Part shown: piece by piece, positions 7,941 to 43,456 of the stretch
How the letters are laid out: each line of letters begins with the position of its first letter
Numbering within the stretch: position 1 is the first letter of the stretch
Notes under the pieces: model-generated
Seen by the model: only the letters and a program-made list of their open reading frames with translations
Databases searched by the model: none
What the model was told of the DNA's origin: nothing
Translations under genes and position numbers: made by a program
From: Phyllobates terribilis
Lineage: Eukaryota
Length of the DNA stretch: 64,000 bases
Direction of reading: 5' to 3'
NCBI RefSeq assembly: GCF_046119375.1
Contig: NW_027362761.1
Coordinates: 1,213,650,001 to 1,213,714,000, forward strand

Positions 7941-7960
7941 TGACAGCCTCTTTTAAAGAC

Positions 7961-8518
7961 ATGTCGTTGACAAATCACCTTTATATTTTCACATTTGTGG
8001 TGGTGGTGGCAGGTCCGATCTATGACGATGTCTGCAAATTACCTGAGCAAGAGAACTTAAAGCAGCTGCATAATGCTTTTGTGAAGGCGAGCTCGGCCGC
8101 CAACTGTTCCACGAATGCTGAGTTAGACGAAGAACAATCCGAGAATGAAGAGATGAGGATGAAATTTTGTAATACGGTCTCAAAGATGAGCGATGACGAA
8201 GTTGGTGTTGTTATACATGAAATTCTGTTATGGATAGAGGACAAACTAAAAAGTCTCTTGTGGTCCGATCGGCAAGAATATAGAAATGTGATGGAACTTT
8301 TGCAAATGCAGATAGATCTCACCACTTCTTGCCTATGAGCAACTAAAGCAAGACTCGTGTAATACAAAACAGCAAAGTACTTGTCTCCACAAGGGGATTT
8401 CGTCAAAGATGGCGAGCAATCGCCTTGCAACTTTAAGGTCGCGAACAGCAAGATAACCAGAAACCTTCTGCTGGCCGAACAAATGATCGCTAATGCATAG
8501 ACAAAGCAAAAGTACTGA
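7961..8518 (+). pseudogene. Type I interferon-like pseudogene (unit 1)
   Basis: Full-length homolog of 23195-23752 with CGA>TGA at 8336-8338, CAA>TAA, and a TAG near the 3' end. Confidence 0.75.
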
Positions 8519-10439
8519 AGAAGGCGAGCGGTGAAGCAGCGCGAGCGTCAAAAACAGGTCTCTGATTTTTGTTGTTCATCTTTATGTTTTTTTTTTAATT
8601 TTCTTTTCTGTTTTTTATTTTGTCAATGAAGCTTCAATAAATTCTGGTGTCAAAGGCGATTACTGTGCGGTGAATGTTTTATTTTGTTTTCACTTTTCTT
8701 TTTCTTTCAAGAGTTTTTCAAACACAACAGAACTGGGATGTGCTCGGCGCATATATATAACATTCGTTCACATACGGTCCTCGTGGAGCCTACGGCTCGG
8801 CCACATTACTCCTTTATAGCGTAAAAGATCTTTTGCTGTTGCTAAAATCATGAACTATATTTTTGCCCTTACATCTTGAGGTGGGTGGCAAGGAGAAAGA
8901 ATGAACAAGCGTGTGCTCTCGTTACCAGAGGAAATCTCTGTCTCCTTCCCATTCAAAACGGTTTTTACAATGTTTTTTTGATTTTCGGTCCCCCCCCACC
9001 ACCCCCTCCGCCTGTTCGTGTTTACAGCCGTTTTACATTTTTCTCATCATCTCAAAGTCTTATTCATGTTAGTTGACATCACGTACAGAGACGGTCGGAT
9101 TATGTCACTTGACTATATATGTATATATTAACAACCTGGGCTAAGCCTAAAACTGCAAAAATGAGACACAAAGGAAGGGTCTTTTTAAAAGTCTGATGAT
9201 GTTCTTGACTCCTAGTGTTGAAAAGTCGAGAAGAAATCTTCCTCTTCTGTCTATATAGAACTGAATAGTGCATTAGATTCTCTCATTTTTTTTTTTCTGA
9301 AAATGTAACCGTGTGTTCTCATGGAGCCGCGTCGTGCCATGGATGATGACCAGGCTCTTGTCAACCGGTGCCGAGCTCTGCTCTTACATGCAGAAATAAC
9401 GGGGATCCTGCAATTTCTCTCGTGCTGCTTCGCTCCTGTCTTGAGATCAGGAGTCCTGTTGAGCTCTTAAATACAGCAGTTTTTTACATTACCACTTGTT
9501 ATAACCTCCAGCCCATAGAGAAATGTGTTTCAGGCGTTTAGTCGGTCTGCTGACTGATCTGCTGAAGTTTTCCATTTCAATCGGTTCCTCAGATCACACA
9601 CGTTTCTGTCACCTGCAGTGGTCGGCGAGTGACTCGGCTCAGCTAGTATCTCGTACAGAGATTGCTGCTCAGGAAGTCTCTCTCAGCATTCACTGGCTGT
9701 GAAGCTTGAAAGGAGGCAGGGAGGAGGCGCGGCAACTGTCTCTTTTTTTTTTTTTTTTTTTTCAGCTTTGATGGAAGGTATAGACTTTCTACTACTGCTC
9801 CTACAGCCGAGGAGTCACCAGCCGCCCAGCACTGAGCGCTTACTACGCAATAGCTCGGTCTGGGCAGACACCTCGGCTGCTGGGCTTCCTATATTTTGAA
9901 GCGACTGCCACAAGAGGGACCTTCTGAGCGAAACTTTCCAATCTACTATAGCTGACACTACAAAGCTTATTGTTTTATTTTATTTTTTAAATTCTTAGGC
10001 TGCCAGCTCATATTCTAAGTAGGTATATCACTTGGAAGGTTGAGTACGTCTCTTGAGATTATTCTCTTTTTTTCATTTATTTTTCTTTATTTATTTATTT
10101 ATTTATTTTTTTTCTCTGCCAGTGATCAAGTTAGATGACTTGATTTTTCTGTAGTGGTGTTTTATATGTTGATATATATAGCGACCGGTGACAGTAGTTC
10201 TCAGGTGCCTTTTTGCTGTCGGTCACAATAACGATCTAGCCGGTTTGTGGTCTTCCACACTCACCGAGTAATCGTGTGCATGGCCATCTAGTGAAAGTTT
10301 AGTCACGGTCTTGATAGGAATCATTTGACTGTCGGGTCTCCGTTACGTTCAATATCCATGCCGGTCATGATCACCCATCTCCACGTAACAGTGTGTGCTA
10401 TGGCGCAATTAGGGAGACAGGCGTCAGCCGAAATAAGGT

Positions 10440-11600
10440 TACTTGGATGGTTATCTCTTGTTTCTTGGCCAGATTCACAAATTAGGAATATTAACATGGG
10501 TCGGTCGTGGAGTGTTTAAAGCATGTGAGGCAGTGTGTTCGACGCCCGCGCTTCCCGACACCGTGCTGTAAATTTTTAAACAGGACTAAGAGAGTTGCAG
10601 CTTTTAGCTGAATGAGAGGCCCCACACATCAGGCGAAAAGAGTAAAGGATCACTGATGCCCTCACCAGTTCACCTCTGTGATTTATTTTTTCTGTGCTGC
10701 GTGCAACATTGTGCTAACAGTTTTTGCTCTATTAAATGATGAAAAACTAGATAAGAACATTTTAAAAAGAGCATTTTTTGATGAGAGTTATGGTCGTTCT
10801 TGGATAAGCCAGAGAGGTCCATGAAGGCTAGGTGAATTGTTATCGTTCGTCTTTTTGGGCAGATTCGCAAATTAGGAATATTAACATGGCTCGATCCTGG
10901 AGTGTTAAAAGCATGTGAGACTGGGTATACAACGTCCGCGCTTCCCGAATCCAAACTGTAAATTTTAAGCAGAATTAAAAGTCGCAACTACAGCTGAACG
11001 AGAGACCCAAATAAGGCAAAAGGAGCAGCATATCACTGACTCCGGCCCTGGTTCAACCCCTGTGACTCTTCTGTGCTGCGTCCAACCTTGACCTAACAGT
11101 TTTTGCTCTATTAAAGGGTGCAAAAAAAAATAGATGAGAACATTTTAAACAGAGCATTTTTGACGAGAGTTACGGTCGTTCTTGGATAAGCCAGAGAGGT
11201 CCACGAAGGCTAGGTGGATGGTTATCTCGTCTTTTTTCGCCAGATTCACAAATTAGGAATATTAACATGGCTCGGTCCAGGAGTGTTAAAAGCGTGTGAG
11301 ACTGGGCATACGACGTCCGTGCTTCCCAAATCTGAACTGTACATTTTTAAACAGAATTAAAAGTTGCAGCTATAGCTGAATGAGAGACCCAAGTAAGGCG
11401 AAAAGGAGCAACATATCACTGACGCCGGCTCTGGTTCAACCCCTGTGACTCTTCTGTGCTGTGTGCAACCTTGACCTAACAGTTTTTGCACTATTAAAGG
11501 GTGCAAAAAAATATATAGACAAGAGTAAATCTAAAAAAAAAAGAGCATTTCTGACAAGAATTACGTCCGTACCTGGATAAGCCACAGGGTTTCACACTGT
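10440..11600 (+). repeat. Diverged ~385-bp repeats upstream of the interferon-like ORF (unit 2)
   Basis: GGATAAGCC at 10802, 11184 and 11575; CAAATTAGGAATATT at 10478, 10868 and 11249. The last partial repeat is the putative promoter/5'UTR of the ORF. The same block is at ~14095-15265 and, one repeat shorter, at ~17740-18525. Confidence 0.85.
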
Positions 11601-11619
11601 GACAGCCTCTTTTAAAGAC

Positions 11620-12177
11620 ATGTCGTTGACAAATCACCTTTATATTTTCACATTTGTGGTGGTGGTGGCAGGTCCGATCTATGACGATGTCTGCAAATTA
11701 CCTGAGCAAGAGAACTTAAAGCAGCTGCATAATGCTTTTGTGAAGGCGAGCTCGGCCGCCAACTGTTCCACGAATGCTGAGTTAGACGAAGAACAATCCG
11801 AGAATGAAGAGATGAGGATGAAATTTTGTAATACGGTCTCAAAGATGAGCGATAACGAAGTTGGTGTTGTTATACATGAAATTCTGTTATGGATAGAGGA
11901 CAAACTAAAAAGTCTCTTGTGGTCCGATCGGCAAGAATATAGAAATGTGATGGAACTTTTGCAAATGCAGATAGATCTCACCACTTCTTGCCTACGAGCA
12001 ACTAAAGCAAGACTCGTGTAATACAAAACAGCAAAGTACTTGTCTCCACAAGGGGATTTCGTCAAAGACGGCGAGCAATCGCCTTGCAACTTTAAGGTCG
12101 CGAACAGCAAGATAACCAGAAACCTTCTGCTAGCCGAACAAATGATCGCTAATGCAGAGACAAAGCAAAAGTACTGA
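11620..12177 (+). pseudogene. Type I interferon-like pseudogene (unit 2)
   Basis: Full-length homolog with a premature TAA at 12019-12021 (CAA in intact copies; shared with unit 1). Confidence 0.75.
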
Positions 12178-15100
12178 AGAAGGCGAGCGGTGAAGCAGCG
12201 CGGGCGTCAAAAACAGGTCTCTGATTTTTGTTGTTCATCTTTATGTTTTTTTTTTAATTTTCTTTTCTGTTTTTTATTTTGTCAATGAAGCTTCAATAAA
12301 TTCTGGTGTCAAAGGCGATTACTGTGCGGTGAATGTTTTATTTTGTTTTCACTTTTCTTTTTCTTTCAAGAGTTTTTCAAACACAACAGAACTGGGATGT
12401 GCTCGGCGCATATATATAACATTCGTTCACATACGGTCCTCGTGGAGCCTACGGCTCGGCCACATTACTCCTTTATAGCGTAAAAGATCTTTTGCTGTTG
12501 CTAAAATCATGAACTATATTTTGCCCTTACATCTTGAGGTGGGTGGCAAGGAGAAAGAATGAACAAGCGTGTGCTCTCGTTACCAGAGGAAATCTCTGTC
12601 TCCTTCCCATTCAAAACTGTTTTTTACAATGTTTTTTTGATTTTCGGTCCCCCCCCACCACCCCCTCCGCCTGTTCGTGTTTACAGCCGTTTTACATTTT
12701 TCTCATCATCTCAAAGTCTTATTCATGTTAGTTGACATCACGTACAGAGACGGTCGGATTATGTCACTTGACTATATATGTATATATTAACAACCTGGGT
12801 TAAGCCTAAAACTGAAAAAATGAGACACAAAGGAAGGGTCTTTTTAAAAGTCTGATGATGTTCTTGACTCCTAGTGTTGAAAAGTCGAGAAGAAATCTTC
12901 CTCTTCTGTCTATATAGAACTGAAAAGTGCATTAGATTCTCTCATTTTTTTTTTTCTGAAAATGTAACCGTGTGTTCTCATGGAGCCGCGTCGTGCCATG
13001 GATGATGACCAGGCTCCTGTCAACCGGTGCCGAGCTCTGCTCTTACATGCAGAAATAACGGGGATCCTACAATTTCTCTCGTGCTGCTTCGCTCCTGTCT
13101 TGAGATCAGGAGTCCTGTTGAGCTCTTAAATACAGCAGTTTTTTTACATTACCACTTGTTATAACCTCCAGCCCATAGAGAAATGTGTTTCAGGCGTTTA
13201 GTCGGTCTGCTGACTGATCTGCTGAAGTTTTCCATTTCAATCGGTTCCTCAGATCACACACGTTTCTGTCACCAGCCGTGGCCGGCGAGTGACTCGGCTC
13301 AGCTAGTATCTCGTACAGAGATTGCTGCTCAGGAAGTCTCTCTCAGCATTCACTGGCTGTGAAGCTTGAAAGGAGGCAGGGAGGAGGCGCGGCAACTGTC
13401 TCTTTTTTTTTTTTTTTTTCAGCTTTTGATGGAAGGTATAGACTTTCTACTACTACTCCTACAGCCGAGGAGTCACCAGCCGCCCAGCACTGAGCGCTTA
13501 CTACACAATAGCTCGGTCTGGGCAGACACCTCGGCTGCTGGGCTTCCTAGATTTTGAAGCGACTGCCACAAGAGGGACCTTCTGAGCGACACGTTCCAAT
13601 CTACTATAGCTGACACTACAAAGCTTATTGTTTTATTTATTTTTAAATTCTTAGGCTGCCAGCTCATATTCTAAGTAGGTATATCATTGGGAAGGTTGAG
13701 TACGTCTCTTGAGATTTTTTTTTCTTTTATTCATTCATTTATTTTTATTTTTTTCTCTGCCAGTGATCAAGTTGGATGGCTTGATTTTTTTTTTTTTTTT
13801 TTTGTGTAGTGGTGATTTTATATGTTGATTTATATAGCGACCGGTGACAGTAGTTCTCAGGTGCCTTTTTGCTGTCGGTCACAATAACGATCTAGACGGT
13901 TTGTGGTCTTCCACACTCCCCGAGTAATCGTGTGCATGGCCATCTAGTGTAAGTTTAGTCACGGTCTTGATAGGAATCATTTGACTGTCGGGTCACCGTT
14001 ACGTTCAATATCTATGCCGCTCATGATCACCCAACTCCACGTAACAGTGTGTGCTATGGCACCATTAGAGAGACAGGCGTCAGCCGAAATAAGGTTACTT
14101 GGATGGTTATCTCTTGTTTCTTGGCCAGATTCACAAATTAGGAATATTAACATGGGTCGGTCGTGGAGTGTTTAAAGCATGTGAGGCAGTGTGTTCGACG
14201 CCCGCGCTTCCCGACACCGTGCTGTAAATTTTTAAACAGGACTAAGAGAGTTGCAGCTTTTAGCTGAATGAGAGGCCCCACACATCAGGTGAAAAGAGTA
14301 AAGGATCACTGATGCCCTCACCAGTCCACCCCTGTGATTTTTTTTTTTTCTGTGCTGCGTGCAACATTGTGCTAACAGTTTTTGCTCTATTAAATGATGA
14401 AAAACTACATGAGAACATTTTAAAAAGAGCATTTTTGACGAGAGTTATGGTCGTTCTTGGATAAGCCAGAGAGGTCCATGAAGGCTTGGTGAATTGTTAT
14501 CGCTCGTCTTTTTGGCCAGATTCACAAATTAGGAATATTAACATGGCTCGATCCTGGAGTGTTAAAAGCATGTGAGACTGGGTATATGAAATCCGCGCTT
14601 CCCGAATCCAAACTGTAAATTTTTAAGCAGAATTAAAAGTCGCAACTAAAGCTGAACGAGAGACCCAAATAAGGTAAAAGGAGCAGCATATCACTGACAC
14701 CGGCCCTGGTTCAACCCCTGTGACTCTTCTGTGCTGCGTGCAACCTTGACCTAACAGTTTTTGCACTATTAAAGGGTGCAAAAATAGATGAGAACATTTT
14801 AAAAAGAGCATTTTTGACGAGAGTTACGGTCGTTCTTGGATAAGCCAGAGAGGTCCACGAAGGCTAGGTGGATGGTTATCTCATCTTTTTTTTTTTACCA
14901 GATTCACAAATTAGGAATATTAACATGGCTCGGTCCAGGAGTGTTAAAAGCATGTGAGACTGGGCATACGACGTCCGTGCTTCCCAAATCTGAACTGTAC
15001 ATTTTAAACAGAATTAAAAGTTGCAGCTATAGCTGAATGAGAGACCAAAGTAAGGCAAAAAGGAGCAACATATCACTGACGCCGGCTCTGGTTCAACCCC

Positions 15101-15284
15101 CTGTGACTCTTCTGTGCTGTGTGCAACCTTGACCTAACAGTTTTTTGCACTATTAAAGGGTGTAAAAAAATATATATAGATAGGAATAAATCTAAAAAAA
15201 AAAAAAAGAGCATTTCTGAAGAGAATTACGTCCGTACCTGGATAAGCCACAGGGTTTCACACTGTGACAGCCTCTTTTAAAGAC

Positions 15285-15843
15285 ATTTCGCTGACAAATC
15301 ACCTTTACATTTTCACATTTGTGGTGGTGGTGGCAGGTCCCATCTATGACGGTGTCTGCAAATTACCTGAGCAAGAGAACTTAAAGCAGCTGCATAATGC
15401 TTTTTGTGAAGGCGAGCTTGGCCGCCAACTGTTCCACAAATGCTGTTTTAGACGAAGAACAATCCGAGAATGAAGAGATGAGGATGAAATTTTTTAATAC
15501 GGTCTCAAAGATGAGCGATGACGAAGTTGGTGTTGTTATACATGAATTTCTGTTATGGATAGAGGACAAACTAAAAAGTCTCATGTGGTCCGATCGGCAA
15601 GAATATAGAAATGTGATGGAACTTTTGCAAATGCAGATAGATCTCACGACTTCTTGCCTACGAGCAACTAAAACAAAACTCGTGCAACACAAAACAGCAA
15701 AGTACTTGTCTCCACAAGGGGATTTCGTCAAAGACGGCGAGCAATCGCCTTGCACCTTTAAGGTCGCGTGTAGCAAGATAACCAGAATCCTTCTGCTGGC
15801 CGAACAAATGATCGCTAATGCAGAGACAAAGCAAAAGTACTGA
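15285..15843 (+). pseudogene. Type I interferon-like pseudogene (unit 3)
   Basis: Start codon ATG>ATT at 15285 and a +1 T in GCTTTTTGTG. The native C-terminus is otherwise present. Confidence 0.75.
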
Positions 15844-18545
15844 AGAAGGCGAGCGGTGAAGCAGCGCGGGCGTCAAAAACAGGTCTCTGATTTTGTTGTT
15901 CATCTTTATGTTTTTAATTTTCTTTTTTCTGTATTTATTTTGTCAATGAAGCTTCAATAAATTCTGGTGTCCAAGGCGATTACTGTGCGGTGAATGTTTT
16001 ATTTTGTTTTTACTTTTCTTTCGAGAGTTTTCAAACATAACAGAACTAGGATGTGCGCGGCGCATATATATAACATTCGTTCACATACGGTCCTCGTGGA
16101 GCCTACGGCTCGGCCACATTACTCCTTTATAGCGTAAAAGATCTTTTGCTGTTGCTAAAATCATGAACTATATTTTTGCCCTTACATCTTGAGGTGGGTG
16201 GCAAGGAGAAAGAATGAACAAGCGTGTGCTCTCATTACCAGAGGAAATCTCTGTCTCCTTCCCATTCAAAACTGTTTTTTACAATGTTTTTTACGGTCAC
16301 CCCCCCCCCACCCGCCTGTTTGTGTTTACAGCCATTTTACATTTCTCATCATCTCAAAGTCTTTTTCGTGTTAGTTGACATCACGTACAGAGACGGTCGG
16401 TTTACGCCACTTGACTATATATGTATATATTAACAACTTGGACTAAGCCTAAAACTGCAAAAATGAGACACAAAGGAAGGGTCTTTTTAAAAGTCTGATG
16501 ATGTTCTTGACTCCTAGTGTTCAAAAGTCGAGAAGAAATCTTCCTCTTCTGTCTATATAGAACTGAAAAGTGCATTAGATTCTCTCTTTTTTTTTTTTTC
16601 TGAAAATGTAACCGTGTGTTCTCATGGAGCCGCGTCGTGCCATGGATGATGACCAGGCTCTTGTCAACCGGGGCCGAGCTCTGCTCTTACATGCAGAAAT
16701 AACGGGGATCCTGCAATTTCTCTCGTGCTGCTTCGCTCCTGTCTTGAGATCAGGAGTCCTGTTGAGCTCTTAAATACAGCAGTTTTTTACATTACCACTT
16801 GTTATAACCTCCAGCCCATAGAGAAATGTGTTTCAGGCGTTTAGTCGGTCTGCTGACTGATCTGCTGAAGTTTTCCATTTCAATCGGTTCCTCAGATCAC
16901 ACACGTTTCTGTCACCAGCCGTGGCCGGCGAGTGACTCGGCTCAGCTAGTATCTCGTACAGAGATTGCTGCTCAGGAAGTCTCTCTCAGCATTCACTGGC
17001 TGTGAAGCTTGAAAGGAGGCAGGGAGGAGGCGCGGCAACTGTCACTTTTTTTTTTTTTTTTTTTTCAGCTTTTGATGGAAGGTACAGACTTTCTACTACT
17101 ACTCCTACAGCCGAGGAGTCACCAGCCGCCCAGCACTGAGCGCTTACTACGCAATAGCTCGGTCTGGGCAGACACCTCGGCTGCTGGGCTTCCTAGATTT
17201 TGAAGCGACTGCCACAAGAGGGACCTTCTGAGCGAAACTTTCCAATCTACTATAGCTGACACTACAAAGCTTATTGTTTTATTTATTTTTAAATTCTTAG
17301 GCTGCCAGCTCATATTCTAAGTAGGTATATCATTGGGAAGGTTGAGTACGTCTCTTGAGATTTTTTTTTTCTTTTATTCATTCATTTATTTTTTTTTTTT
17401 CTCTGCCAGTGATCAAGTTGGATGGCTTGATTTTTTTTTTTTTTTTTGTGTAGTGGTGATTTTATATGTTGATTTATATAGCGACCGGTGACAGTAGTTC
17501 TCAGGTGCCTTTTTGCTGTCGGTCACAATAACGATCTAGCCGGTTTGTGGTCTTCCACACTCCCCGAGTAATCGTGTGCATGGCCATCTAGTGTAAGTTT
17601 AGTCACGGTCTTGATAGGAATCATTTGACTGTCGGGTCACCGTTACGTTCAATATCTATGCCGCTCATGATCACCCAACTCCACGTAACAGTGTGTGCTA
17701 TGGCGCCATTAGAGAGACAGGCGTCAGCCGAAATAAGGTTACTTGGATGGTTATCTCTTGTTTCTTGGCCAGATTCACAAATTAGGAATATTAACATGGG
17801 TCGGTCGTGGAGTGTTTAAAGCATGTGAGGCAGTGTGTTCGACGCCCGCGCTTCCCGACACCGTGCTGTAAATTTTTAAACAGGACTAAGAGAGTTGCAG
17901 CTTTTAGCTGAATGAGAGGCCCCACACATCAGGTGAAAAGAGTAAAGGATCACTGATGCCCTCACCAGTCCACCCCTGTGATTTTTTTTTTTTCTGTGCT
18001 GCGTGCAACATTGTGCTAACAGTTTTTGCTCTATTAAATGATGAAAAACTACATGAGAACATTTTAAAAAGAGCATTTTTGACGAGAGTTATGGTCGTTC
18101 TTGGATAAGCCAGAGAGGTCCATGAAGGCTTGGTGGATGGTTATCTCGTCTTTTTTTTACCAGATTCACAAATTAGGAATATTAACATGGCTCGGTCCAG
18201 GAGTGTTAAAAGCATGTGAGACTGGGCATACGACGTCCGTGCTTCCCAAATCTGAACTGTACATTTTAAACAGAATAAAAAGTTGCAGCTATAGCTGAAT
18301 GAGAGACCAAAGTAAGGCAAAAAGGAGCAACATATCACTGACGCCGGCTCTGGTTCAACCCCCTGTGACTCTTCTGTGCTGTGTGCAACCTTGACCTAAC
18401 AGTTTTTTGCACTATTAAAGGGTGTAAAAAAATATATATAGATAAGAATAAATCTAAAAAAAAAAAAAGAGCATTTCTGAAGAGAATTACGTCCGTACCT
18501 GGATAAGCCACAGGGTTTCACACTGTGACAGCCTCTTTTAAAGAC

Positions 18546-19065
18546 ATGTCGTTGGCAAATCACCTTTACATTTTCACATTTGTGGTGGTGGTGGCAGGTC
18601 CGATCTATGACGGTGTCTGCAAATTACCTGAGCAAGAGAACTTATACCAGCTGCATAATGCTTTTGTGAAGGCGAGCTCGGCCGCCAACTGTTTCGTAAA
18701 TGCTGTGTTAGCCGAAGAACAATCCGAGAATGAAGAGATGAGGATGACATTTTTTTAATACGGTCTCAAAGATGAGCGATGACGAAGTTGGTGTTGTTAT
18801 ACATGAATTTCTGTTATGGATAGAGGACAAACTAAAAAGTCTCTTGTGGTCCGATCGGCAAGAATATAGAAATATGATGGAACTTTTGCAAATGCAGATA
18901 GATCGCACGACTTCTTGCCTACGAGCAACTAAAACAAGACTCGTGCAATACAAAACAGCTAAGTACTTGTCTCCACAAGGGGATTTCGTCAAAGATGGCG
19001 AGCAATCGCCTTGCACCTTTAAGGTTCAACCCCCTGTGACTCTTCTGTGCTGTGTGCAACCTTGA
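18546..19065 (+). pseudogene. Truncated, frameshifted interferon-like copy
   Basis: T7 instead of T6 in the A(C/A)ATTTTTTAAT tract splits the ORF (track ORFs 18525-18758 and 18772-19065). Confidence 0.7.
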
Positions 19066-19209
19066 CCTAACAGTTTTTGCGCTATTAAAGGGTGCAAAAA
19101 AAATATATAGACCCGAGTAAATCTAAATAAAAGAGCATTTCTGATGAAAATTACGTCCGTACCTGGATAAGCCACAGGGTTTCACACTGTGACAGCCTCT
19201 TTTAAAGAC

Positions 19210-19728
19210 ATGTCGTTGGCAAATCACCTTTACATTTTCACATTTGTGGTGGTGGTGGCAGGTCCGATCTATGACGGTGTCTGCAAATTACCTGAGCAAG
19301 AGAACTTAAAGCAGCTGCATAATGCTTTTGTGAAGGCGAGCTCGGCTGCCAACTGTTTCGTAAATGCTGTGTTAGCCGAAGAACAATCCGAAAATGAAGA
19401 GATGAGGATGAAATTTTTTAATACGGTCTCAAAGATGAGCGATGACGAAGTTGGTGTTGTTATACATGAATTTCTGTTATGGATAGAGGACAAACTAAAA
19501 AGTCTCTTGTGGTCCGATCGGCAAGAATATAGAAATATGATGGAATTTTTGCAAATGCAGATAGATCGCGTGACTTCTTGCCTACGAGCAACTAAAACAA
19601 GACTCGTGCAATACAAAACAGCAAAGTATTTGTCTCCACAAGGGGATTTCGTCAAAGACGGCGAGCAATCGCCTTGCACCTTTAAGGTTCAACCCCCTGT
19701 GACTCTTCTCTGCTGTGTGCAACCTTGA
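19210..19728 (+). CDS. Interferon-like ORF, open but C-terminally truncated (172 aa, ends SPCTFKV-QPPVTLLCCVQP)
   Basis: The ATG is 21 nt downstream of the GTG used by the ORF track. The last helix is replaced by promoter-derived sequence. No poly(A) signal of its own seen. Confidence 0.45.
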   Translation: MSLANHLYIFTFVVVVAGPIYDGVCKLPEQENLKQLHNAFVKASSAANCFVNAVLAEEQSENEEMRMKFFNTVSKMSDDEVGVVIHEFLLWIEDKLKSLLWSDRQEYRNMMEFLQMQIDRVTSCLRATKTRLVQYKTAKYLSPQGDFVKDGEQSPCTFKVQPPVTLLCCVQP

Positions 19729-19872
19729 CCTAACAGTTTTTGCACTACTAAAGGGTGCAAAAAATATATATAGACAAGAGTAAATCTAAATAAAAGAGCA
19801 TTTCTGACGAGAATTACGTCCGTACCTGGATAAGCCACAGGGTTTCACACTGTGACAGCCTCTTTTAAAGAC

Positions 19873-20391
19873 ATGTCGTTGGGAAATCACCTTCACATTT
19901 TCACATTTGTGGTGATGGTGGCAGGTCCGATCTATGACGGTGTCTGCAAATTACCTGAGCAAGAGATCTTAAAGCAGCTGCATAATGCTTTTGTGAAGGC
20001 GAGCTCGGCCGCCAACTGTTTCGTAAATGCTGTGTTAGCCGAAGAACAATCCGAGAATGAAGAGATGAGGATGACATTTTTTAATACGGTCTCAAAGATG
20101 AGCGATGACGAAGTTGGTGTTGTTATACATGAATTTCTGTTATGGATAGAGGACAAACTAAAAAGTCTCTTGTGGTCCGATCGGCAAGAATATAGAAATG
20201 TGATGGAACTTTTGCAAATGCAGATAGATCGCACGACTTCTTGCCTACGAGCAACTAAAACAAGACTCGTGCAATACAAAACAGCAAAGTACTTGTCTGC
20301 ACAAGGGGATTTCGTCAAAGACGGCGAGCAATCGCCTTGCACATTTAAGGTTCAACCCCCTGTGACTCTTCTGTGCTGTGTGCAACCTTGA
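19873..20391 (+). CDS. Interferon-like ORF, open but C-terminally truncated (172 aa)
   Basis: Same structure as 19210-19728. Confidence 0.45.
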   Translation: MSLGNHLHIFTFVVMVAGPIYDGVCKLPEQEILKQLHNAFVKASSAANCFVNAVLAEEQSENEEMRMTFFNTVSKMSDDEVGVVIHEFLLWIEDKLKSLLWSDRQEYRNVMELLQMQIDRTTSCLRATKTRLVQYKTAKYLSAQGDFVKDGEQSPCTFKVQPPVTLLCCVQP

Positions 20392-20535
20392 CCTAACAGT
20401 TTTTCAACTATTAAAGAGTGCAGAAACTATATATAGACAAGAGTAAATCTAAATAAAAGAGCATTTCTGACGAAAATTACGTCCGTACCTGAATAAGCCA
20501 CAGGGTTTCACACTGTGACAGCCTCTTTTAAAGAC

Positions 20536-21078
20536 ATGTCGTTGGCAAATCACCTTTACATTTTCACATTTGTGGTGATGGTGGCAGGTCCGATCTATGA
20601 CGGTGTCTGCAAATTACCTGAGCAAGAGAACTTAAAGCAGCTGCATAATGCTGTTGTGAAGGCGAGCTCGGCCGCCAACTGTTTCGTAAATGCTGTGTTA
20701 GCCGAAGAACAATCCGAGAATGAAGAGATGAGGATGACATTTTTTAATACGGTCTCAAAGATGAGCGATGACGAAGTTGGTGTTGTTATACATGAATTTC
20801 TGTTATGGATAGAGGACAAACTAAAAAGTCTCTTGTGGTCCGATCGGCAAGAATATAGAAATATGATGGAATTTTTGCAAATGCAGATAGATCGCGCGAC
20901 TTCTTGCCTACGAGCAACTAAAACAAGACTCGTGCAATACAAAACAGCAAAGTACTTGTCTCCACAAGGGGATTTCGTCAAAGACGGCGAGCAATTGCCT
21001 TGCACCTTTAAGCTTCAACCCCCCTGTGACTCTTCTGTGCTGTGTGCAACCTTGACCAAACAGTTTTTGCACTATTAA
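20536..21078 (+). CDS. Interferon-like ORF, open, truncated with an alternative tail (180 aa, ends LQPPCDSSVLCATLTKQFLHY)
   Basis: An extra C in the junction C-tract shifts the tail frame. Confidence 0.4.
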   Translation: MSLANHLYIFTFVVMVAGPIYDGVCKLPEQENLKQLHNAVVKASSAANCFVNAVLAEEQSENEEMRMTFFNTVSKMSDDEVGVVIHEFLLWIEDKLKSLLWSDRQEYRNMMEFLQMQIDRATSCLRATKTRLVQYKTAKYLSPQGDFVKDGEQLPCTFKLQPPCDSSVLCATLTKQFLHY

Positions 21079-21198
21079 AGGGTGAAAAAATATATATAGA
21101 CAAGAGTAAATCTAAATAAAAGAGCATTTCTGACGAAAATTACGTCCGTACCTGGATAAGCCACAGGGTTTCACACTGTGACAGCCTCTTTTAAAGAC

Positions 21199-21717
21199 AT
21201 GTCGTTGGCAAATCACCTTTACATTTTCACATTTGTGGTGGTGGTGGCAGGTCCGATCTATGACGGTGTCTGCAAATTACCTGAGCAAGAGAACTTAAAG
21301 CAGCTGCATAATGCTTTTGTGAAGGCGAGCTCGGCCGCCAACTGCTTCGTAAATGCTGTGTTAGCCGAAGAACAATCCGAGAATGAAGAGATGAGGATGA
21401 AATTTTTTAATACGGTCTCAAAGATGAGCGATGATGAAGTTGGTGTTGTTATACATGAATTTCTGTTATGGATAGAGGACAAACTAAAAAGTCTCTTGTG
21501 GTCCGATCGGCAAGAATATAGAAATATGATGGAACTTTTGCAAATGCAGATAGATCGCACGACTTCTTGCCTACGAGCAACTAAAACAAGACTCGTGCAA
21601 TACAAAACAGCAAAGTACTTATCTCCACAAGGGGATTTCGTCAAAGACGGCGAGCAATCGACTTGCACCTTTAAGGTTCAACCCCTTGTGACTCTTCTGT
21701 GCTGTGTGCAACCTTGA
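21199..21717 (+). CDS. Interferon-like ORF, open but C-terminally truncated (172 aa)
   Basis: Same structure as 19210-19728. Confidence 0.45.
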   Translation: MSLANHLYIFTFVVVVAGPIYDGVCKLPEQENLKQLHNAFVKASSAANCFVNAVLAEEQSENEEMRMKFFNTVSKMSDDEVGVVIHEFLLWIEDKLKSLLWSDRQEYRNMMELLQMQIDRTTSCLRATKTRLVQYKTAKYLSPQGDFVKDGEQSTCTFKVQPLVTLLCCVQP

Positions 21718-21863
21718 CCTAACAGTTTTTGCGCTATTAAAGGATGCAAAAAAAATATATATAGACAAGAGTAAATCTAAATAAAAGAGCATTTCTGACG
21801 AGAATTACGTCCGTACCTGGATAAGCCACAGGGTTTCACACTGTGACAGCCTCTTTTAAAGAC

Positions 21864-22386
21864 ATGTCGTTGGCAAATCACCTTTACATTTTCACATTTG
21901 TGGTGGTGGTGCCAGGTCCGATCTATGCCGGTGTCTGCAAATTACCTGAGCAAGAGAACTTAAAGCAGCTGCATAATGCTTTTGTGAAGGCGAGCTCGGC
22001 CGCCAAATGTTTCGTAAATGCTGTGTTTGCCGAAGAACAATCCGAGAATGAAGAGATGAGGATGAAATTTTTTTTTTAATAAGGTCTCAAAGATGAGCGA
22101 TGACGAAGTTGGTGTTGTTATACATGAATTTCTGTGATGGATAGAGGACAAACTAAAAAGTCTCTTGTGGTCCGATCGGCAAGAATATAGAAATATGATG
22201 GAACTTTTGCAAATGCAGATAGATCGCGCGACTTCTTGCCTACGAGCAACTAAAACAAGACTCGTGCAATACAAAACAGCAAAGTACTTGTCTGCACAAG
22301 CGGATTTCGTCAAAGACGGCGAGCAATCGCCTTGCACCTTTAAGGTTCAACCCCCTGTGACTCTTCTGTGCTGTGTGCAACCTTGA
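21864..22386 (+). pseudogene. Truncated, frameshifted interferon-like copy
   Basis: T-tract expanded to T9 followed by TAA, plus a TGA in the helix-B region. Confidence 0.7.
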
Positions 22387-22530
22387 CCTAACAGTTTTTG
22401 CGTTATCAAAGGGTGCAAAAAAAAAATATAGACCAGAGTAAATCTAAATAAAAGAGCATTTCTGACGAGAATTACGTCCGTACCTGGATAAGCCACAGGG
22501 TTTCACACTGTGACAGCCTCTTTTAAAGAC

Positions 22531-23049
22531 ATGTCGTTGGCAAATCACCTTTACATTTTCACATTTGTGGTGGTGGTGGCAGGTCCGATCTATGACGGTG
22601 TCTGCAAATTACCTGAGCAAGAGATCTTAAAGCAGCTGCATAATGCTTTTGTGAAGGCGAGCTCGGCCGCCAACTATTTAGTAAATGCTGTGTTAGCCGA
22701 AGAACAATCCGAGAATGAAGAGATAAGGATGAAATTTTTTAATACGGTCTCAAAGATGAGCGATGACGAAGTTGGTGCTGTTATACATGAATTTCTGTTA
22801 TGGATAGAGGACAAACTAAAAAGTCTCTTGTGGTCCGATCGGCAAGAATATAGAAATATGATGGAACTTTTGCAAATGCAGATAGATTGCGCGACTTCTT
22901 GCCTACGAGCAACTAAAACAAGACTCGTGCAATACAAAACAGCAAAGTACTTGTCTCCACAAGGGGATTTCGTCAAAGACGGCGAGCAATCGCCTTACAC
23001 CTTTAAGGTTCAACCCCCTGTTACTCTTCTGTGCTGTGTGCAAACTTGA
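22531..23049 (+). CDS. Interferon-like ORF, open but C-terminally truncated (172 aa)
   Basis: Same structure as 19210-19728, but Cys49 is changed to Tyr (AANY). Confidence 0.4.
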   Translation: MSLANHLYIFTFVVVVAGPIYDGVCKLPEQEILKQLHNAFVKASSAANYLVNAVLAEEQSENEEIRMKFFNTVSKMSDDEVGAVIHEFLLWIEDKLKSLLWSDRQEYRNMMELLQMQIDCATSCLRATKTRLVQYKTAKYLSPQGDFVKDGEQSPYTFKVQPPVTLLCCVQT

Positions 23050-23088
23050 ACTAACAGTTTTTGCGTTATTAAAGGGTGCAAAAAAAAA

Positions 23089-23127
23089 TATATAGACAAG
23101 AGTAAATCTAAATAAAAGAGCATTTCT
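23089..23127 (+). promoter_or_regulatory. Putative TATA box (TATATAG) and Inr-like CATTTC of the interferon-like gene
   Basis: TATATAG at 23089-23095; CATTTC with A at 23122, 33 nt downstream of the TATA start; no upstream ATG before 23195. Repeated in the 663-bp units. Confidence 0.5.
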
Positions 23128-23194
23128 GACGAGATTTACGTCCGTGCCTGGATAAGCCACAGGGTTTCACACTGTGACAGCCTCTTTTAAAGAC

Positions 23195-23752
23195 ATGTCG
23201 TTGGCAAATCACCTTTACATTTTCACATTTGTGGTGGTGGTGGCAGGTCCCATCTATGACGGTGTCTGCAAATTACCTGAGCAAGAGAACTTAAAGCAGC
23301 TGCATAATGCTTTTGTGAAGGCGATCTCGGCCGCCAACTGTTTCGTAAATGCTGTGTTAGCCGAAGAACAATCCGAGAATGAAGAGATGAGGATGAAATT
23401 TTTTAATACGGTCTCAAAGATGAGCGATGACGAAGTTGGTGTTGTTATACATGAATTTCTGTTATGGATAGAGGACAAACTAAAAAGTCTCTTGTGGTCC
23501 GATCGGCAAGAATATAGAAATATGATGGAACTTTTGCAAATGCAGATAGATCGCACGACTTCTTGCTTACGAGCAACTAAAACAAGACTCATGCAATACA
23601 AAACAGCAAAGTACTTGTCTCCACAAGGGGATTTCGTCAAAGATGGCGAGCAATCGCCTTGCACCTTTAAAGTCGCGTACAGCAAGATAATCAGAATCCT
23701 TCTGCTGGCCGAACAAATGATCGCTAATGCAGAGACAAAGCAAAAGTACTGA
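23195..23752 (+). CDS. Intact intronless divergent type I interferon-like secreted protein (185 aa)
   Basis: Hydrophobic leader MSLANHLYIFTFVVVVAG. Cys at 25/49/124/156 (1/25/100/132 counting from the first Cys, versus 1/29/98/138 in IFN-alpha2). CKLP ~ CDLP; VVIHEFLLWI ~ PVLHEMIQQI; ungapped KYLSPQGDFVKDGEQSPCTFKVAYSKIIR ~ [29 protein letters not shown]. TATA upstream and AATAAA downstream. Comparison by eye to a remembered sequence. Confidence 0.72.
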   Translation: MSLANHLYIFTFVVVVAGPIYDGVCKLPEQENLKQLHNAFVKAISAANCFVNAVLAEEQSENEEMRMKFFNTVSKMSDDEVGVVIHEFLLWIEDKLKSLLWSDRQEYRNMMELLQMQIDRTTSCLRATKTRLMQYKTAKYLSPQGDFVKDGEQSPCTFKVAYSKIIRILLLAEQMIANAETKQKY

Positions 23753-23868
23753 AGAAGGCGAGCGGTGAAGCAGCGCGGGCGTCAAAAACAGGTCTCTGAT
23801 TTTGTTGCTCATCTTTATGTTTTTAATTTTCTTTTTTTTTACTGCTTTTATTTTGTCAATGAAGCTTC

Positions 23869-23874
23869 AATAAA
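23869..23874 (+). terminator. Polyadenylation signal AATAAA of the full-length gene
   Basis: 117 nt after the stop codon and followed by GU/U-rich sequence. Equivalent signals at 34396, 44131, 52153 and 58674. Confidence 0.6.
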
Positions 23875-27650: not shown

Positions 27651-28409
27651 CATAAGGAAACAAAGACAAAGTCTGACATGACATTCGCCAAAATACTGTT
27701 CATTGTGGTATCTGTGACCGGTCTGGAGCCGGACGACAGCACAGGACTAAATGTTAAACAGGAATAAGAGGGCTGCAGCTTTTAGCTGAATGAGAGGTCA
27801 CACATCAGGCGAAAGGAGTAAAGGATCACTGATGCCGTCACCAGTTCATCCCTGTGATTTCTTTCTTCTGTGCTGCGTGCAACATTGTTCCAACAGTTTT
27901 TGCTCTGTTAAATGATGCAAAACTACATGAGAACATTTTAAAAAGAGCATTTTTTTACGAGAGTTACGGTCGTTCTTGGATAAGCCAGAGAGGTCCATGA
28001 AGGCTAGGTGGATGGTTATCTTGTCTTTTTGGCGAGATTCACAAATTAGGAATATTAACATGGCTCGGTCCAGGAGTGTTAAAAGCGTGTGAGACTGGGC
28101 ATACGACGTCCATATTTCCCAAGTCTGAACTGTACATTGTAAACTGAATTAAAAGTTGCAGCTATAGCTCAATGAGAGACCCAAGTAAGGCGAAAAGGAG
28201 CAACATATCACTGACGCCGGCTCTGGTTCAACCCCTGTGACTCTTCTGTGCTGTGTGCAACCTTGACCTAACAGTTTTTGCACTAATAAAGGGTGCAAAA
28301 AAATATATAGACAAGAGTAAATCTAAAAAAAGAGCATTTTCTGATAAGAATTACGTCCGTACCTGGATAAGCCACAGGGTTTCACACTGTGACAGCCTCT
28401 TTTAAAGAC

Positions 28410-31400
28410 ATGTCGATGGCAAATCACCTTTACATTTTCACATTTGTGTGGTGGTGGTGGCAGGTCCGATCTATGACGGTGTCTGCAAATTACCTGAGCA
28501 ATAGAACTTTAAGCAGCTGCATAATGCTTTTGTGAAGGCGAGCTTGGCCGCCAACTGTTCCACAAATGCTGTGTTAGCCGAAGAACAATCCGAGAATGAA
28601 GAGATGAGGATGAAATTTTTTTAATACGGTCTCAAAGATGAGCGATGACGAAGTTGGTGTTGTTATACATGAATTTCTGTTATGGATAGAGGACAAACTA
28701 AAAAGTCTCTTGTGGTCCGATCGGCAAGAATATAGAAATATGATGGAACTTTTGCAAATGCAGATAGATCGAGCGACTTCTTGCCTACGAGCAACTAAAA
28801 CAAGACTCGTACAATACAAAACAGCAAGTACTTGTCTCCACAAGGGGATTTCGTCAAAGACGGCGAGCAATCGCCTTGCACCTTTAAGGTTCAACCCCCT
28901 GTGACTCTTCTGTGCTGTGTGCAACCTTGACCTAACAGTTTTTGCACTATTAAAGGGTGCAAAAAATATATATAGACAAGAGTAAATCTAAATAAAAGAG
29001 CATTTCTGACGAGAATTACGTCCGTACCTGGATAAGCCACAGGGTTTCACACTGTGACAGCCTCTTTTAAAGACATGTCGTTGGCAAATCACCTTTACAT
29101 TTTCACATTTGTGGTGGTGGTGGCAGGTCTGATCTATGACGGTGTCTGCAAATTATCTGAGCAAGAGAACTTAAAGCAGCTGCATAATGCTTTTGTGAAG
29201 GCGAGCTCGGCCGCCAACTGTTTCGTAAATGCTGTGTTAGCCGAAGAACAATCCGAGAATGAAGAGATGAGGATGAAATTTTTTAATACGGTCTCAAAGA
29301 TGAGCGATGACGAAGTTGGTGTTGTTATACATGAATTTCTGTTATTATTGAGGACAAACTAAAATGTCCATTGTGGTAAGATCGGCAAGAATATAGAAAT
29401 ATGATGGAACTTTTGCAAATGCAGATAGATCTCGTGACTTCTTGCCTACGAGCAACTAAAACAAGACTCGTGCAATACAAAACAGCAAAGTACTTGTCTC
29501 CACAAGGGGATTTCGTCAAAGACGGCGAGCAATCGCCTTGCACCTTTAAGGTTCAACCCCCTGTGACTCTTCTGTGCTGTGTGCAACCTTGACCTAACAG
29601 TTTTTGCACTATTAAAGGGTGAAAAAATATATATAGACAAGAGTAAATCTAAATAAAAGAGCATTTCTGACGAAAATTACGTCCGTACCTGGATAAGCCA
29701 CAGGGTTTCACACTGTGACAGCCTCTTTTAAAGACATGTCGTTGGCAAATCACCTTTACATTTTCACATTTGTGGTGGTGGTGGTGGCAGGTCCGATCTA
29801 TGACGGTGTCATCAAATTACCTGAGCAAGAGAACTTATAGCAGCTGCATAATGCTTTTGTGAAGGCGAGCTCGGCCGCCAACTGTTTCGTAAATGCTGTG
29901 TTAGCCGAAGAACAATCCGAGAATGAAGAGATGAGGATGAATTTTTTTAATACGGTCTCAAAGATGAGCGATGACGAAGTTGGTGTTGTTATACATGAAT
30001 TTCTGTTATGGATAGAGGACAAACTAAAAAGTCTCTTGTGGTCCGATCGGAAAGAATATAGAAATATGATGGAACTTTTGCAAATGCAGATAGATCGCGC
30101 GACTTCTTGCCTATGAGCAACTAAAACAAGACTCGTGCAATACAAAACAGCAAAGTACTTGTCTCCACAAGGGGATTTCGTCAAAGACGGCGAGCAATCG
30201 CCTTGCACCTTTAAGGTTCAACCCCCTGTGACTCTTCTGTGCTGTGTGCAACCTTGACCTAACAGTTTTTGCACTATAAAAGGGTGCAAAAAATATATAT
30301 AGACAAGAGTAAAGCTAAATTAAAGGAGCAATTCTGACGAAAATTACGTCCGTACCTGGATAAGCCACAGGGTTTCACACTGTGACAGCCTCTTTTAAAG
30401 ACATGTCGTTGGCAAATCACCTTTACATTTTCACATTTGTGGTGGTGGTGGCAGGTCCGATCTATGACGGTGTCTGCAAATTATCTGAGCAAGAGAACTT
30501 AAAGCAGCTGCATAATGCTTTTGTGAAGGCGAGCTCGGCCGCCAACTGTTTCGTAAATGCTGTGTTAGCCGAAGAACAATCCGAGAATGAAGAGATGAGG
30601 ATGAAATTTTTTAATACGGTCTCAAAGATGAGCGATGACGAAGTTGGTGTTGTTATACATGAATTTCTGTTATTATTGAGGACAAACTAAAAAGTCCATT
30701 GTGGTCCGATCGGCAAGAATATAGAAATATGATGGAACTTTTGCAAATGCAGATAGATTTCGCGACTTCTTGCCTACGAGCAACTAAAACAAGACTCGTG
30801 CAATACAAAACAGCAAAGTACTTGTCTCCACAAGGGGATTTCGTCAAAGACGGCGAGCAATCGCCTTGCACCTTTAAGGTTCAACCCCCTGTGACTCTTC
30901 TGTGCTGTGTGCAACCTTGACCTAACAGTTTTTGCACTATTAAAGGGTGAAAAAATATATATAGACAAGAGTAAATCTAAATAAAAGAGCATTTCTGACG
31001 AAAAATACGTCCGTACCTGGATAAGCCACAGGGTTTCACACTGTGACAGCCTCTTTTAAAGACATGTCGTTGGCAAATCACCTTTACATTTTCACATTTG
31101 TGGTGGTGGTGGCAGGTCCGATCTATGACGGTGTCTGCAAATTACCTGAGCAAGAGAACTTAAAGCAGCTGCATAATGCTTTTATGAAGGCGAGCTCGGC
31201 CGCCAACTGTTCCACGAATGCTGAGTTAGACGAAGAACAATCCGAGAATGAAGAGATGAGGATGACATTTTTTTAATACGGTCTCAAAGATGAGCGATGA
31301 CGAAGTTGGTGTTGTTATACATGAATTTCTGTTATGGATAGAGGACAAACTAAAAAGTCTCTTGTGGTCCGATCGGCAAGAATATAGAAATATGATGGAA

Positions 31401-33573: not shown

Positions 33574-33721
33574 CCTAACAGTTTTTGCGCTATTAAAGGG
33601 TGCAAAAAATATATATATATAGACAAGAGTAAATCTAAATAAAAGAGCATTTCTGACAAGAATTACGTCCGTACCTGGATAAGCCACAGGGTTTCACACT
33701 GTGACAGCCTCTTTTAAAGAC

Positions 33722-41314: not shown

Positions 41315-41462
41315 CCTAACAGTTTTTGCGCTATTAAAGGGTGCAAAAAAAATATATATATAGACAAGAGTAGATCTAAATAAAAGAGCATTTCTGACGA
41401 GAATTACGTCCGTGCCTGGATAAGCCACAGGGTTTCACACTGTGACAGCCTCTTTTAAAGAC

Positions 41463-41981: not shown

Positions 41982-42127
41982 CCTAACAGTTTTTGCACTA
42001 TTAAAGGGTGCAAAAAAATATATATAGACAAGAGTAAATCTAAATTAAAAGAGCATTTCTGACGAAAATTACGTCCGTACCTGGATAAGCCACAGGGTTT
42101 CACACTGTGACAGCCTCTTTTAAAGAC

Positions 42128-43308: not shown

Positions 43309-43456
43309 CCTAACAGTTTTTGCGCTATTAAAGGGTGCAAAAAAAATATATATATAGACAAGAGTAGATCTAAATAAAAGAGCATTTCTGACGAGAATTA
43401 CGTCCATGCCTGGATAAGCCACAGGGTTTCACACTGTGACAGCCTCTTTTAAAGAC

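What the first reader, a model, noticed from the sequence alone, without database searches (positions are those of the whole stretch)
18352..23874. Promoter-stacking architecture: many promoters and truncated ORFs, one poly(A) site and one full gene per array
Seen: the 663-bp unit junction TTTAA-GGT-TCAACC joins the ORF (TTTAAGGTCGCG) to the promoter region (CTCTGGTTCAACC) at a 3-bp GGT microhomology. Every internal copy keeps the TATA/Inr and ORF but loses most of the last helix, the R149-equivalent and the poly(A) signal; only the last copy is complete. Inference: transcripts from upstream copies would read through to the single AATAAA. The array could tune the dose of the terminal gene (enhancer stacking or transcriptional interference) or yield NMD-prone or decoy products.
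Basis: partly seen in the sequence, partly recalled or inferred. Interest (0 to 1): 0.7.

Follow-up and report, generated by a model that had tools for sequence, protein, structure and literature searches.

The report
Tandem array of truncated frog interferon-like genes
A poison-frog interferon-like gene was partly duplicated once and the 663-base piece multiplied into rows of truncated, decaying copies ending in one complete gene; this looks like a by-product of repeat-prone DNA, and nothing shows it works as a stacked-promoter control device.

Summary
The structure is real. Window 18354-23672 holds eight head-to-tail units of about 663 bp. Each unit has a 185-bp 5' flank and the first 159 codons of an intronless ORF. 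All 28 internal junctions in the window share one breakpoint, at a 3-bp GGT microhomology. Only the last unit of each array runs on into the final helix, stop codon, 3' UTR and terminal AATAAA.

The ORF is a very divergent type I interferon-like protein. Its one database relative passes Pfam's Interferon threshold, and a joint profile hits only human IFN-alpha.

- Internal copies do not all keep the ORF: 5 of 7 are open here, and 6 of 28 in the window.
- Every unit carries its own AATAAA about 60 nt after the truncated stop, so "one poly(A) site per array" fails at the hexamer level.

Internal copies drift neutrally (47 non-synonymous, 20 synonymous, 6 nonsense changes). Their 5' flank is more variable than the ORF. 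Unit number varies among paralogous blocks (9, 8, 8, 5, 3).

The best reading is one microhomology-mediated partial duplication, unequal-exchange expansion, then block duplication. Function of the stacked flanks is untested, because no RNA data were found. The scan has noted this only on this same stretch.

The parts
17972..18353 (+). Last full copy of the 382-bp non-coding repeat directly upstream of the array. The first ~150 bp of each 663-bp unit is the start of one more copy of this repeat.
18354..19024 (+). Unit A1.1. The 5' edge shows the unrearranged parent CTCTGG|TTCAACC. The ORF is frameshifted (+1 in a T run, stop after 70 codons).
19025..19687 (+). Unit A1.2. Truncated ORF open (19210-19728, 172 codons, tail read from the next unit's flank).
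19688..20350 (+). Unit A1.3. Truncated ORF open (19873-20391).
20351..21013 (+). Unit A1.4. ORF open, but the junction variant changes the tail (20536-21078, 180 codons).
21014..21676 (+). Unit A1.5. Truncated ORF open (21199-21717).
21677..22345 (+). Unit A1.6. ORF broken by a +4 insertion in the T run (stop after 71 codons).
22346..23008 (+). Unit A1.7. Truncated ORF open (22531-23049).
23009..23194 (+). 5' flank of the terminal unit: an A-run/(TA)n TATA-like stretch, and an AATAAA at unit position 103.
23195..23752 (+). Complete intronless ORF of 185 codons. It has a hydrophobic N-terminus, four cysteines in the mature part (C25, C49, C124, C156) and a last helix with R167. It is divergent type I interferon-like.
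23753..23874 (+). 3' UTR ending in AATAAA (23869-23874), followed by a GT/T-rich stretch. It is present only after the last unit.
28227..34199 (+). Paralogous array A2 of nine units. No internal ORF is open. Terminal ORF 33722-34279 is intact.
38618..43934 (+). Paralogous array A3 of eight units. It contains a very recent 3-unit duplication (A3.3-5 = A3.6-8). Terminal ORF 43457-44014 is intact.
48637..51956 (+). Paralogous array A4 of five units. Terminal ORF 51479-52036 is intact.
56486..58477 (+). Paralogous array A5 of three units. Terminal ORF 58000-58557 is intact.
7776..15843 (+). Three unduplicated single copies (units at 7776-8438, 11435-12097, 15092-15763, each running on into the 3' end). 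They keep the ancestral TTTAAGGTCGCG. All three are disabled (stops at codons 126 and 134; lost start plus a +1).

Best explanation
This stretch is a gene-fragment tandem array.

Origin (inferred from the anatomy):
1. An intronless, very divergent type I interferon-like gene already sat in a tandemly duplicated cluster, behind a 382-bp non-coding repeat.
2. It suffered one partial tandem duplication. The copied segment runs from 185 bp upstream of the start codon to codon 159, and its ends were joined at a 3-bp GGT microhomology. That points to replication slippage, template switching or end joining.
3. Unequal exchange between the 663-bp units then enlarged the array.
4. The whole array and its flank, with 75-bp and 32-bp satellites, was later copied as 8-10 kb blocks at least five times. 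Units have since been gained and lost.

Consequence (shown): in each array only the last unit is contiguous with the last helix, the natural stop, the 3' UTR and the strong AATAAA, so it is the only copy able to encode a whole protein. Internal units are truncated pseudogene copies that evolve neutrally.

The stacked 5' flanks are a passive consequence of where the breakpoints fell. If the flank is a working promoter, internal units probably give short, useless transcripts or read-through RNA. A regulatory role is neither needed to explain the structure nor indicated by it. Whether the terminal genes themselves are still functional is open.
For: One shared breakpoint:
- A single breakpoint occurs in all 28 junctions, and both parental sequences are preserved.

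Block duplication of an already-formed array:
- Unit types defined by shared frameshifts and substitutions recur at matching positions in arrays A2-A5.
- The unique spacer parts are 98.8-99.8% alike.

Footprints of unequal exchange:
- Identical unit pairs occur inside A3 and A2.
- A terminal-type unit (A3.5) ends in an internal junction.
- Array sizes are 9, 8, 8, 5 and 3.

Neutral decay of internal copies:
- 22 of 28 are broken by at least 7 distinct frameshift events and 6 nonsense events.
- Internal-only substitutions are 47 non-synonymous, 20 synonymous and 6 nonsense, against a neutral expectation of about 72%, 24% and 4.5%.
- In this array alone the counts are 20, 8 and 1.
- CpG transitions are 4 times as frequent per base as other transitions.

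Protein identity:
- phmmer over 1.84 billion representatives gives one true relative, P0001 (40% identity over residues 79-181, E 1.9e-11).
- P0001 scores 30.4 bits on PF00143 Interferon, above the 26.8-bit cut-off.
- The joint profile's eight best PDB hits are all human IFN-alpha. The alignment puts C156 and R167 on C138 and R149.
- The model is all-helical, with a last helix at 158-184.

The junction is confirmed in contigs from other studies.
Against: - No expression data could be obtained, so activity of the flanks is untested.
- Five of seven internal ORFs in this particular array are still open, and their private changes lean slightly to synonymous (12 non-synonymous, 7 synonymous). That is not significant, but it does not exclude weak constraint.
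- Integrity of the five terminal ORFs is not evidence of selection. The non-coding 500 bp downstream is just as similar (0.24% against 0.5% for the ORF). About two disabling events would be expected on the terminal lineage at the internal rate, so finding none has P of about 0.1 (my estimate).
- The window's own protein misses Pfam Interferon directly, and the fold searches found only generic helical bundles. The interferon assignment rests on one bridging sequence and a marginal profile hit (E 0.056).
Confidence: 0.75

Rival explanations
1. Functional promoter or enhancer stacking, or transcriptional interference. The repeated 5' flanks act together on the terminal gene, and unit number tunes the dose.
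For: - Every unit keeps the same 185-bp flank with the TATA-like stretch.
- Arrays with 3 to 9 units precede near-identical terminal genes. That would give a natural dosage series.
- Precedents exist for duplicated promoters that act as enhancers, such as the Xenopus rDNA spacer (my own knowledge).
Against: - The internal flanks are the most variable part of the unit.
- They carry no interferon-type response elements.
- They are part of a 382-bp repeat that is also present without any ORF.
- Unit number is not conserved among blocks that are about 99% alike.
- The CpG-decay pattern suggests germline methylation.
- There are no transcription data.
Confidence: 0.1
2. The whole locus is dead. The terminal ORFs are also non-functional and are intact only because the block duplications are very young. 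The cluster is an interferon-pseudogene-derived satellite.
For: - All three single copies are disabled.
- Terminal ORFs are no more conserved than the non-coding DNA downstream of them.
- Among terminal copies there are 4 non-synonymous and 3 synonymous differences.
- No gene product identical or similar to it is on record, apart from one Logan fragment.
- No RNA holder was found.
Against: - The terminal lineage stayed open while most sister lineages broke.
- The four-cysteine pattern and the last-helix motif shared with P0001 and IFN-alpha are kept.
- Interferons are often silent until induced, so missing RNA means little.
Confidence: 0.3
3. The truncated internal ORFs encode useful decoy or antagonist proteins of 172 residues with the junction-derived tail.
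For: - Five open copies in this array share the same tail.
- Each is followed by an AATAAA about 60 nt after its stop, so self-contained short mRNAs are conceivable.
Against: - 22 of 28 internal copies are broken, and substitutions are neutral.
- The product lacks the whole last helix of the bundle and gains two extra cysteines, so a stable fold is unlikely. This is an inference from the interferon fold.
Confidence: 0.03
4. Assembly artefact: a mis-assembled or over-expanded repeat.
For: The genome is very large and repeat-rich. Homopolymer frameshifts can be long-read errors.
Against: - The junction is bridged by short-read contigs from two other studies.
- Units differ by 3-4% with clade-specific variants, and the frameshifts follow the tree rather than being random.
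- The five arrays show a coherent history.
Confidence: 0.03

Closest known systems
D4Z4 macrosatellite with DUX4 (human 4q35)
   Same: Both are head-to-tail arrays in which every unit carries an intronless ORF. A stable full-length mRNA depends on sequence, including the poly(A) signal, that lies only beyond the last unit (PMC8399085 abstract).
   Different: D4Z4 units are 3.3 kb and hold the complete ORF. Here the units are 663 bp and the ORF is cut at codon 159. Each unit here also has its own AATAAA hexamer. Nothing is known here about chromatin control or expression.
Amphibian intronless type I interferon clusters (Xenopus IFNX genes)
   Same: Both are intronless interferon genes multiplied in tandem clusters that include pseudogenes. 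X. tropicalis has 32 genes plus 3 pseudogenes in about 0.5 Mb, and more than half of the promoters lack virus-response elements (PMC4928184).
   Different: Those clusters are described as whole-gene duplicates. Here most copies are one recurrent 3'-truncated fragment in satellite-like arrays. The protein is too divergent for a direct Pfam hit.
Xenopus rDNA intergenic spacer promoters and 60/81-bp enhancer repeats (my own knowledge, not checked here)
   Same: Copies of a gene's promoter are stacked in tandem upstream of the real gene.
   Different: That is a Pol I system with demonstrated enhancer activity and a terminator before the gene promoter. No activity is shown here, and the repeats here drag a broken coding region along.
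Xenopus oocyte 5S DNA repeat with its truncated pseudogene (my own knowledge, not checked here)
   Same: Both are partial tandem duplications of a gene inside a repeat unit that give truncated, inactive copies next to the real gene.
   Different: That is a Pol III gene, with one pseudogene per unit rather than many fragments per complete gene.

Membership tests
Type I interferon (Pfam PF00143) | Direct match of the protein to the Interferon alpha/beta profile at or above the gathering score | tested here: not met
   One search gave no Interferon hit for the 185-aa or the 172-aa product.
Type I interferon (Pfam PF00143) | Significant homology to a protein that does pass the profile threshold | tested here: met
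   P0001 has E 1.9e-11 and 40% identity over residues 79-181. P0001 scores 30.4 bits against a 26.8 cut-off on PF00143. The joint profile's top 8 PDB hits are all IFN-alpha, at E 0.056-0.36.
Type I interferon (Pfam PF00143) | Conserved cysteine before the last helix and the receptor-contact arginine 11 residues later (IFN-alpha2 C138, R149) | tested here: met
   The alignment puts C156 on C138 and R167 on R149. Both are invariant against P0001.
Type I interferon (Pfam PF00143) | Five-helix cytokine bundle | tested here: inconclusive
   The single-sequence model is all-helical, with five long helices after the signal peptide, but mean pLDDT is 57.5. Foldseek and VIA-align found only generic helical bundles. 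The language-model neighbours are helical cytokines, all with scores under 0.9.
Type I interferon (Pfam PF00143) | Signalling through the interferon receptor and antiviral activity | not testable with these tools
   This needs expression and a cell assay.
Gene-bearing macrosatellite of the D4Z4/DUX4 type | Head-to-tail array of units of hundreds to thousands of bp, each with ORF sequence | tested here: met
Gene-bearing macrosatellite of the D4Z4/DUX4 type | Complete ORF in every unit | tested here: not met
   Internal units stop at codon 159, and most are also frameshifted.
Gene-bearing macrosatellite of the D4Z4/DUX4 type | Poly(A) signal only distal to the last unit | tested here: not met
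   AATAAA occurs at unit position 94-104 in all eight units, and ATTAAA at about 60 in six. Actual usage could not be tested.
Partial-duplication pseudogene | Truncated relative to the parent, with disabling mutations and neutral substitution pattern | tested here: met
Stacked promoter or enhancer repeats (as in the Xenopus rDNA spacer) | The duplicated promoter copies are transcriptionally active or enhance the downstream gene | not testable with these tools
   The runs that hold the sequence behave as DNA: their contigs run past the AATAAA into the satellite.

The most novel reading that the evidence does not exclude
The arrays are copy-number-variable control modules for an inducible interferon-like gene. 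The stacked 185-bp flanks fire on infection, and either boost the terminal gene (local factor recruitment) or damp it (promoter occlusion, repeat-induced silencing). On this reading, the five near-identical terminal genes behind 3, 5, 8, 8 and 9 units would form a built-in dosage series.
Probability: 0.07. Interest if true: 0.7.

Novelty: new variant of a known kind. Interest (0 to 1): 0.35.

Why it matters
The locus shows, with both parental sequences still present, how a fragment of a protein-coding immune gene can turn into satellite-like DNA. The steps are one microhomology junction, unequal exchange, then block duplication.

It is also a practical warning. Such arrays can inflate counts of intronless interferon genes in amphibian genomes: this window alone has 36 ORF-bearing copies, and only 5 are complete and open.

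If the terminal genes are expressed, the five arrays of different length in front of almost identical genes would be a ready-made test of whether upstream promoter-bearing repeats change gene output. That question is otherwise studied mainly at the human D4Z4 locus.

Tried and rejected
- RNA evidence. The single run search gave eight holders, none on record as RNA. Laid contigs run through the AATAAA into the 75-bp satellite, with depth rising in the satellite and Illumina adapter ends. I treat them as DNA, so they only confirm the junction.
- Direct family scans of the protein gave nothing: Pfam, PDB sequence search, and word-index protein searches with the protein and with the alignment.
- An exact look-up of the product was blank.
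- P0002, from the big search, is a HEAT-repeat protein matched through low-complexity stretches. I rejected it.
- The DNA of the P0001 contig could not be fetched.
- Fold searches on the low-confidence model were uninformative.
- Splicing idea. Could the junction AAG|GTTCAA serve as a donor to the terminal AAAG|TC? I rejected this by reading: the join would be out of frame and both sites are weak.
- Interferon-type promoter elements (ISRE, IRF-E, NF-kB, GAS) are absent. The only hit is a TTTCnnnnGAAA palindrome, which the terminal units do not keep.
- The antisense ORFs of 100-143 codons have no family match, and the relative P0001 supports the plus-strand frame.
- Rfam found nothing in the window.
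I repeated it from the stored alignment.


Full report
**What is there**

Direct-repeat search and BLAST of one unit against the window find eight head-to-tail units at 18354-23672, 96-97% alike.

The same unit occurs 36 times in the window:
- three single copies, at 7776, 11435 and 15092;
- five arrays of 8, 9, 8, 5 and 3 units, at 18354, 28227, 38618, 48637 and 56486;
- a further block that begins at the window's end.

Each unit has 185 bp of 5' flank and the first 159 codons of an ORF.

**The junction**

All 28 internal junctions read TTTAAGG|TTCAACC. The sequence upstream of every first unit and every single copy reads CTCTGG|TTCAACC. The three single copies read TTTAAGG|TCGCG at the corresponding ORF position.

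Terminal copies of the arrays now read TTTAAAGTCGCG, a shared synonymous change.

Short-read contigs from two other studies bridge the junction at 23008/23009. One is a 697-nt contig, the size expected for a collapsed 663-bp tandem unit. The tandem junction is therefore real DNA; unit number per array was not checked independently.

**The gene**

Earlier notes of this scan place the genome in the golden poison frog; I did not verify this.

The complete product (23195-23752, 185 residues) has:
- a hydrophobic N-terminus;
- four cysteines in the mature part;
- an all-helical low-confidence model whose last helix is residues 158-184.

It has no direct Pfam or PDB match, and the word-index search was blank.

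The exhaustive search over 1.84 billion representatives gave one true relative, P0001. It is 40% identical over residues 79-181, with E 1.9e-11. P0001 comes from a 2.26-kb Logan contig. It passes Pfam's Interferon alpha/beta threshold, at 30.4 bits against a 26.8 cut-off.

A profile of the two proteins has human IFN-alpha as its eight best PDB hits, at E 0.056-0.36. It aligns the SPC...R segment with IFN-alpha2 C138...R149. Language-model neighbours are helical cytokines, all below the trust level. Fold searches gave only generic bundles.

I read the ORF as a very divergent intronless type I interferon-like gene. This is probable, not proven. Expanded clusters of intronless interferons with pseudogenes are known in frogs (PMC4928184).

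The breakpoint after codon 159 removes the entire last helix and the R149-equivalent (R167). It adds a 12-residue tail with two extra cysteines.

**Corrections to the observation**

In this array, 5 of 7 internal ORFs are open. A1.1 has a +1 in a T run and A1.6 has a +4. A1.4 has a changed tail.

In the other arrays only 1 of 21 internal copies is open. The breaks fall in at least seven distinct frameshift events and six nonsense events. These follow the unit tree, so they are inherited mutations and not random read errors.

Every unit has AATAAA at unit position 94-104, about 60 nt past the stop of the truncated ORF. Six of the eight also have ATTAAA near position 60. The terminal AATAAA at 23869 has the better GT/T-rich downstream context. 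Even so, "one poly(A) site per array" is not what the sequence shows.

**History**

The tree of units shows types shared between arrays A2-A5 at matching positions: a first-unit type, two 70-codon types, a 95-codon type and a terminal type. The unique parts of the inter-array spacers are 98.8-99.8% alike. So an already-formed array was copied as a block of 8-10 kb.

Later unequal exchange is visible in three ways:
- A3.3-A3.5 equals A3.6-A3.8;
- A3.5 is a terminal-type unit ending in an internal junction;
- array sizes differ.

The array of this finding (A1) is the oldest branch. Its units have 1.3-1.6% private change each.

The single-copy blocks (3.66-kb period, 94-96% alike) show the state before the partial duplication. 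All three are pseudogenes.

The first ~150 bp of the unit is the beginning of a 382-bp non-coding repeat. One to nearly three copies of that repeat stand upstream of every single copy and every array. The supposed promoter is thus repeat sequence that also occurs without an ORF.

**Selection**

*Internal copies.*
- Substitutions seen only in internal units are 47 non-synonymous, 20 synonymous and 6 nonsense. The neutral expectation is about 72%, 24% and 4.5%.
- For this array alone the counts are 20, 8 and 1. For its five open copies they are 12 and 7. This is neutral, or nearly so.
- The internal 5' flank has more variant sites per base (0.23) than the ORF (0.15).
- Much of the flank's variation sits in the A-run/(TA)n stretch.
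- CpG transitions are 4 times as frequent per base as other transitions, a germline-methylation signature.

*Terminal copies.*
- Among the five terminal copies the ORF differs by 0.5%. The 500 bp of non-coding DNA downstream differs by 0.24%, and the 5' flank by 2.85%.
- The intact terminal ORFs therefore reflect recent duplication at least as much as selection.
- From tree lengths I estimate about two disabling events expected on the terminal lineage, so finding none has P of about 0.1.

**Promoter and transcription**

The flank has the TATA-like stretch at unit 76-84 and a TTTTAAAG just before the ATG. It has no ISRE, IRF-E, NF-kB or 3-spaced GAS consensus. The one TTTCnnnnGAAA palindrome is not kept in terminal units. 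This is weak evidence, since many Xenopus interferon promoters also lack such elements.

No RNA evidence was obtainable. Read-through RNA would be unspliced. Only the long-3'UTR route to NMD would then apply, not the exon-junction route (PMC2896932, abstract).

**Verdict**

The anatomy is as described, with two corrections. The best explanation is a single microhomology-mediated partial duplication of an interferon-like gene, amplified by unequal exchange and then by block duplication. That history leaves neutral truncated copies in front of one complete gene per array.

The closest known architecture is the D4Z4/DUX4 macrosatellite. It differs in having complete ORFs in its units and no signal inside them. 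The promoter-stacking function remains a low-probability, testable idea.

Noticed in passing
window 1489-7002: A 5.5-kb insertion is absent from the paralogous spacer. It has an 8-bp target duplication (CTCACCAG) and an imperfect 11-bp terminal inverted repeat, so it looks like a hAT-type transposon. It carries a 200-bp tandem repeat (1742-2264) and palindromic 121/154-bp repeats (3144-3396, 5071-5441).
   Followed up: partly
window 23009-23194 and the matching flanks at 33533, 43268, 51290, 57816: Among the five terminal units the 185-bp 5' flank is 2.85% diverged, while the ORF (0.5%) and the 500 bp downstream (0.24%) are almost identical. Most changes lie in the A-run/(TA)n stretch. The cause could be slippage or exchange with internal units, and it is not resolved.
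   Followed up: partly
window 24517-26017, 35043-36094, 44779-46131, 52801-53852, 59036-61875: A 75-bp satellite with strong strand skew lies downstream of every array. Copy number runs from 14 to 38 between paralogous blocks, and chance ORFs of up to 211 codons run through it.
   Followed up: no
window 26387-26770, 37066-37166, 47081-47181, 54802-55030, 62847-62947: A 32-bp satellite has 12, 3, 3, 7 and 3 copies in successive blocks.
   Followed up: no
window 7032-7865, 10444-11524, 14103-15169, 17972-18374, 27852-28246 and equivalents: A 382-bp non-coding tandem repeat stands upstream of each gene copy. The gene's own 5' flank is the first ~150 bp of one more copy.
   Followed up: partly
window 39947-43934: Units A3.3-A3.5 are identical to A3.6-A3.8 over the shared 663 bp, which marks a very recent three-unit duplication. 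A3.5 is a terminal-type unit with an internal junction.
   Followed up: yes
P0001 contig (Logan, SRR32377441; no locus): The only database relative sits on a 2.26-kb contig, with a 131-codon ORF 137 bp upstream on the same strand. That ORF may be the frameshifted N-terminal half. The DNA could not be fetched.
   Followed up: no
window 18708-23685, minus strand: Antisense ORFs of 100-143 codons run through most units. They have no family match and are probably chance.
   Followed up: partly
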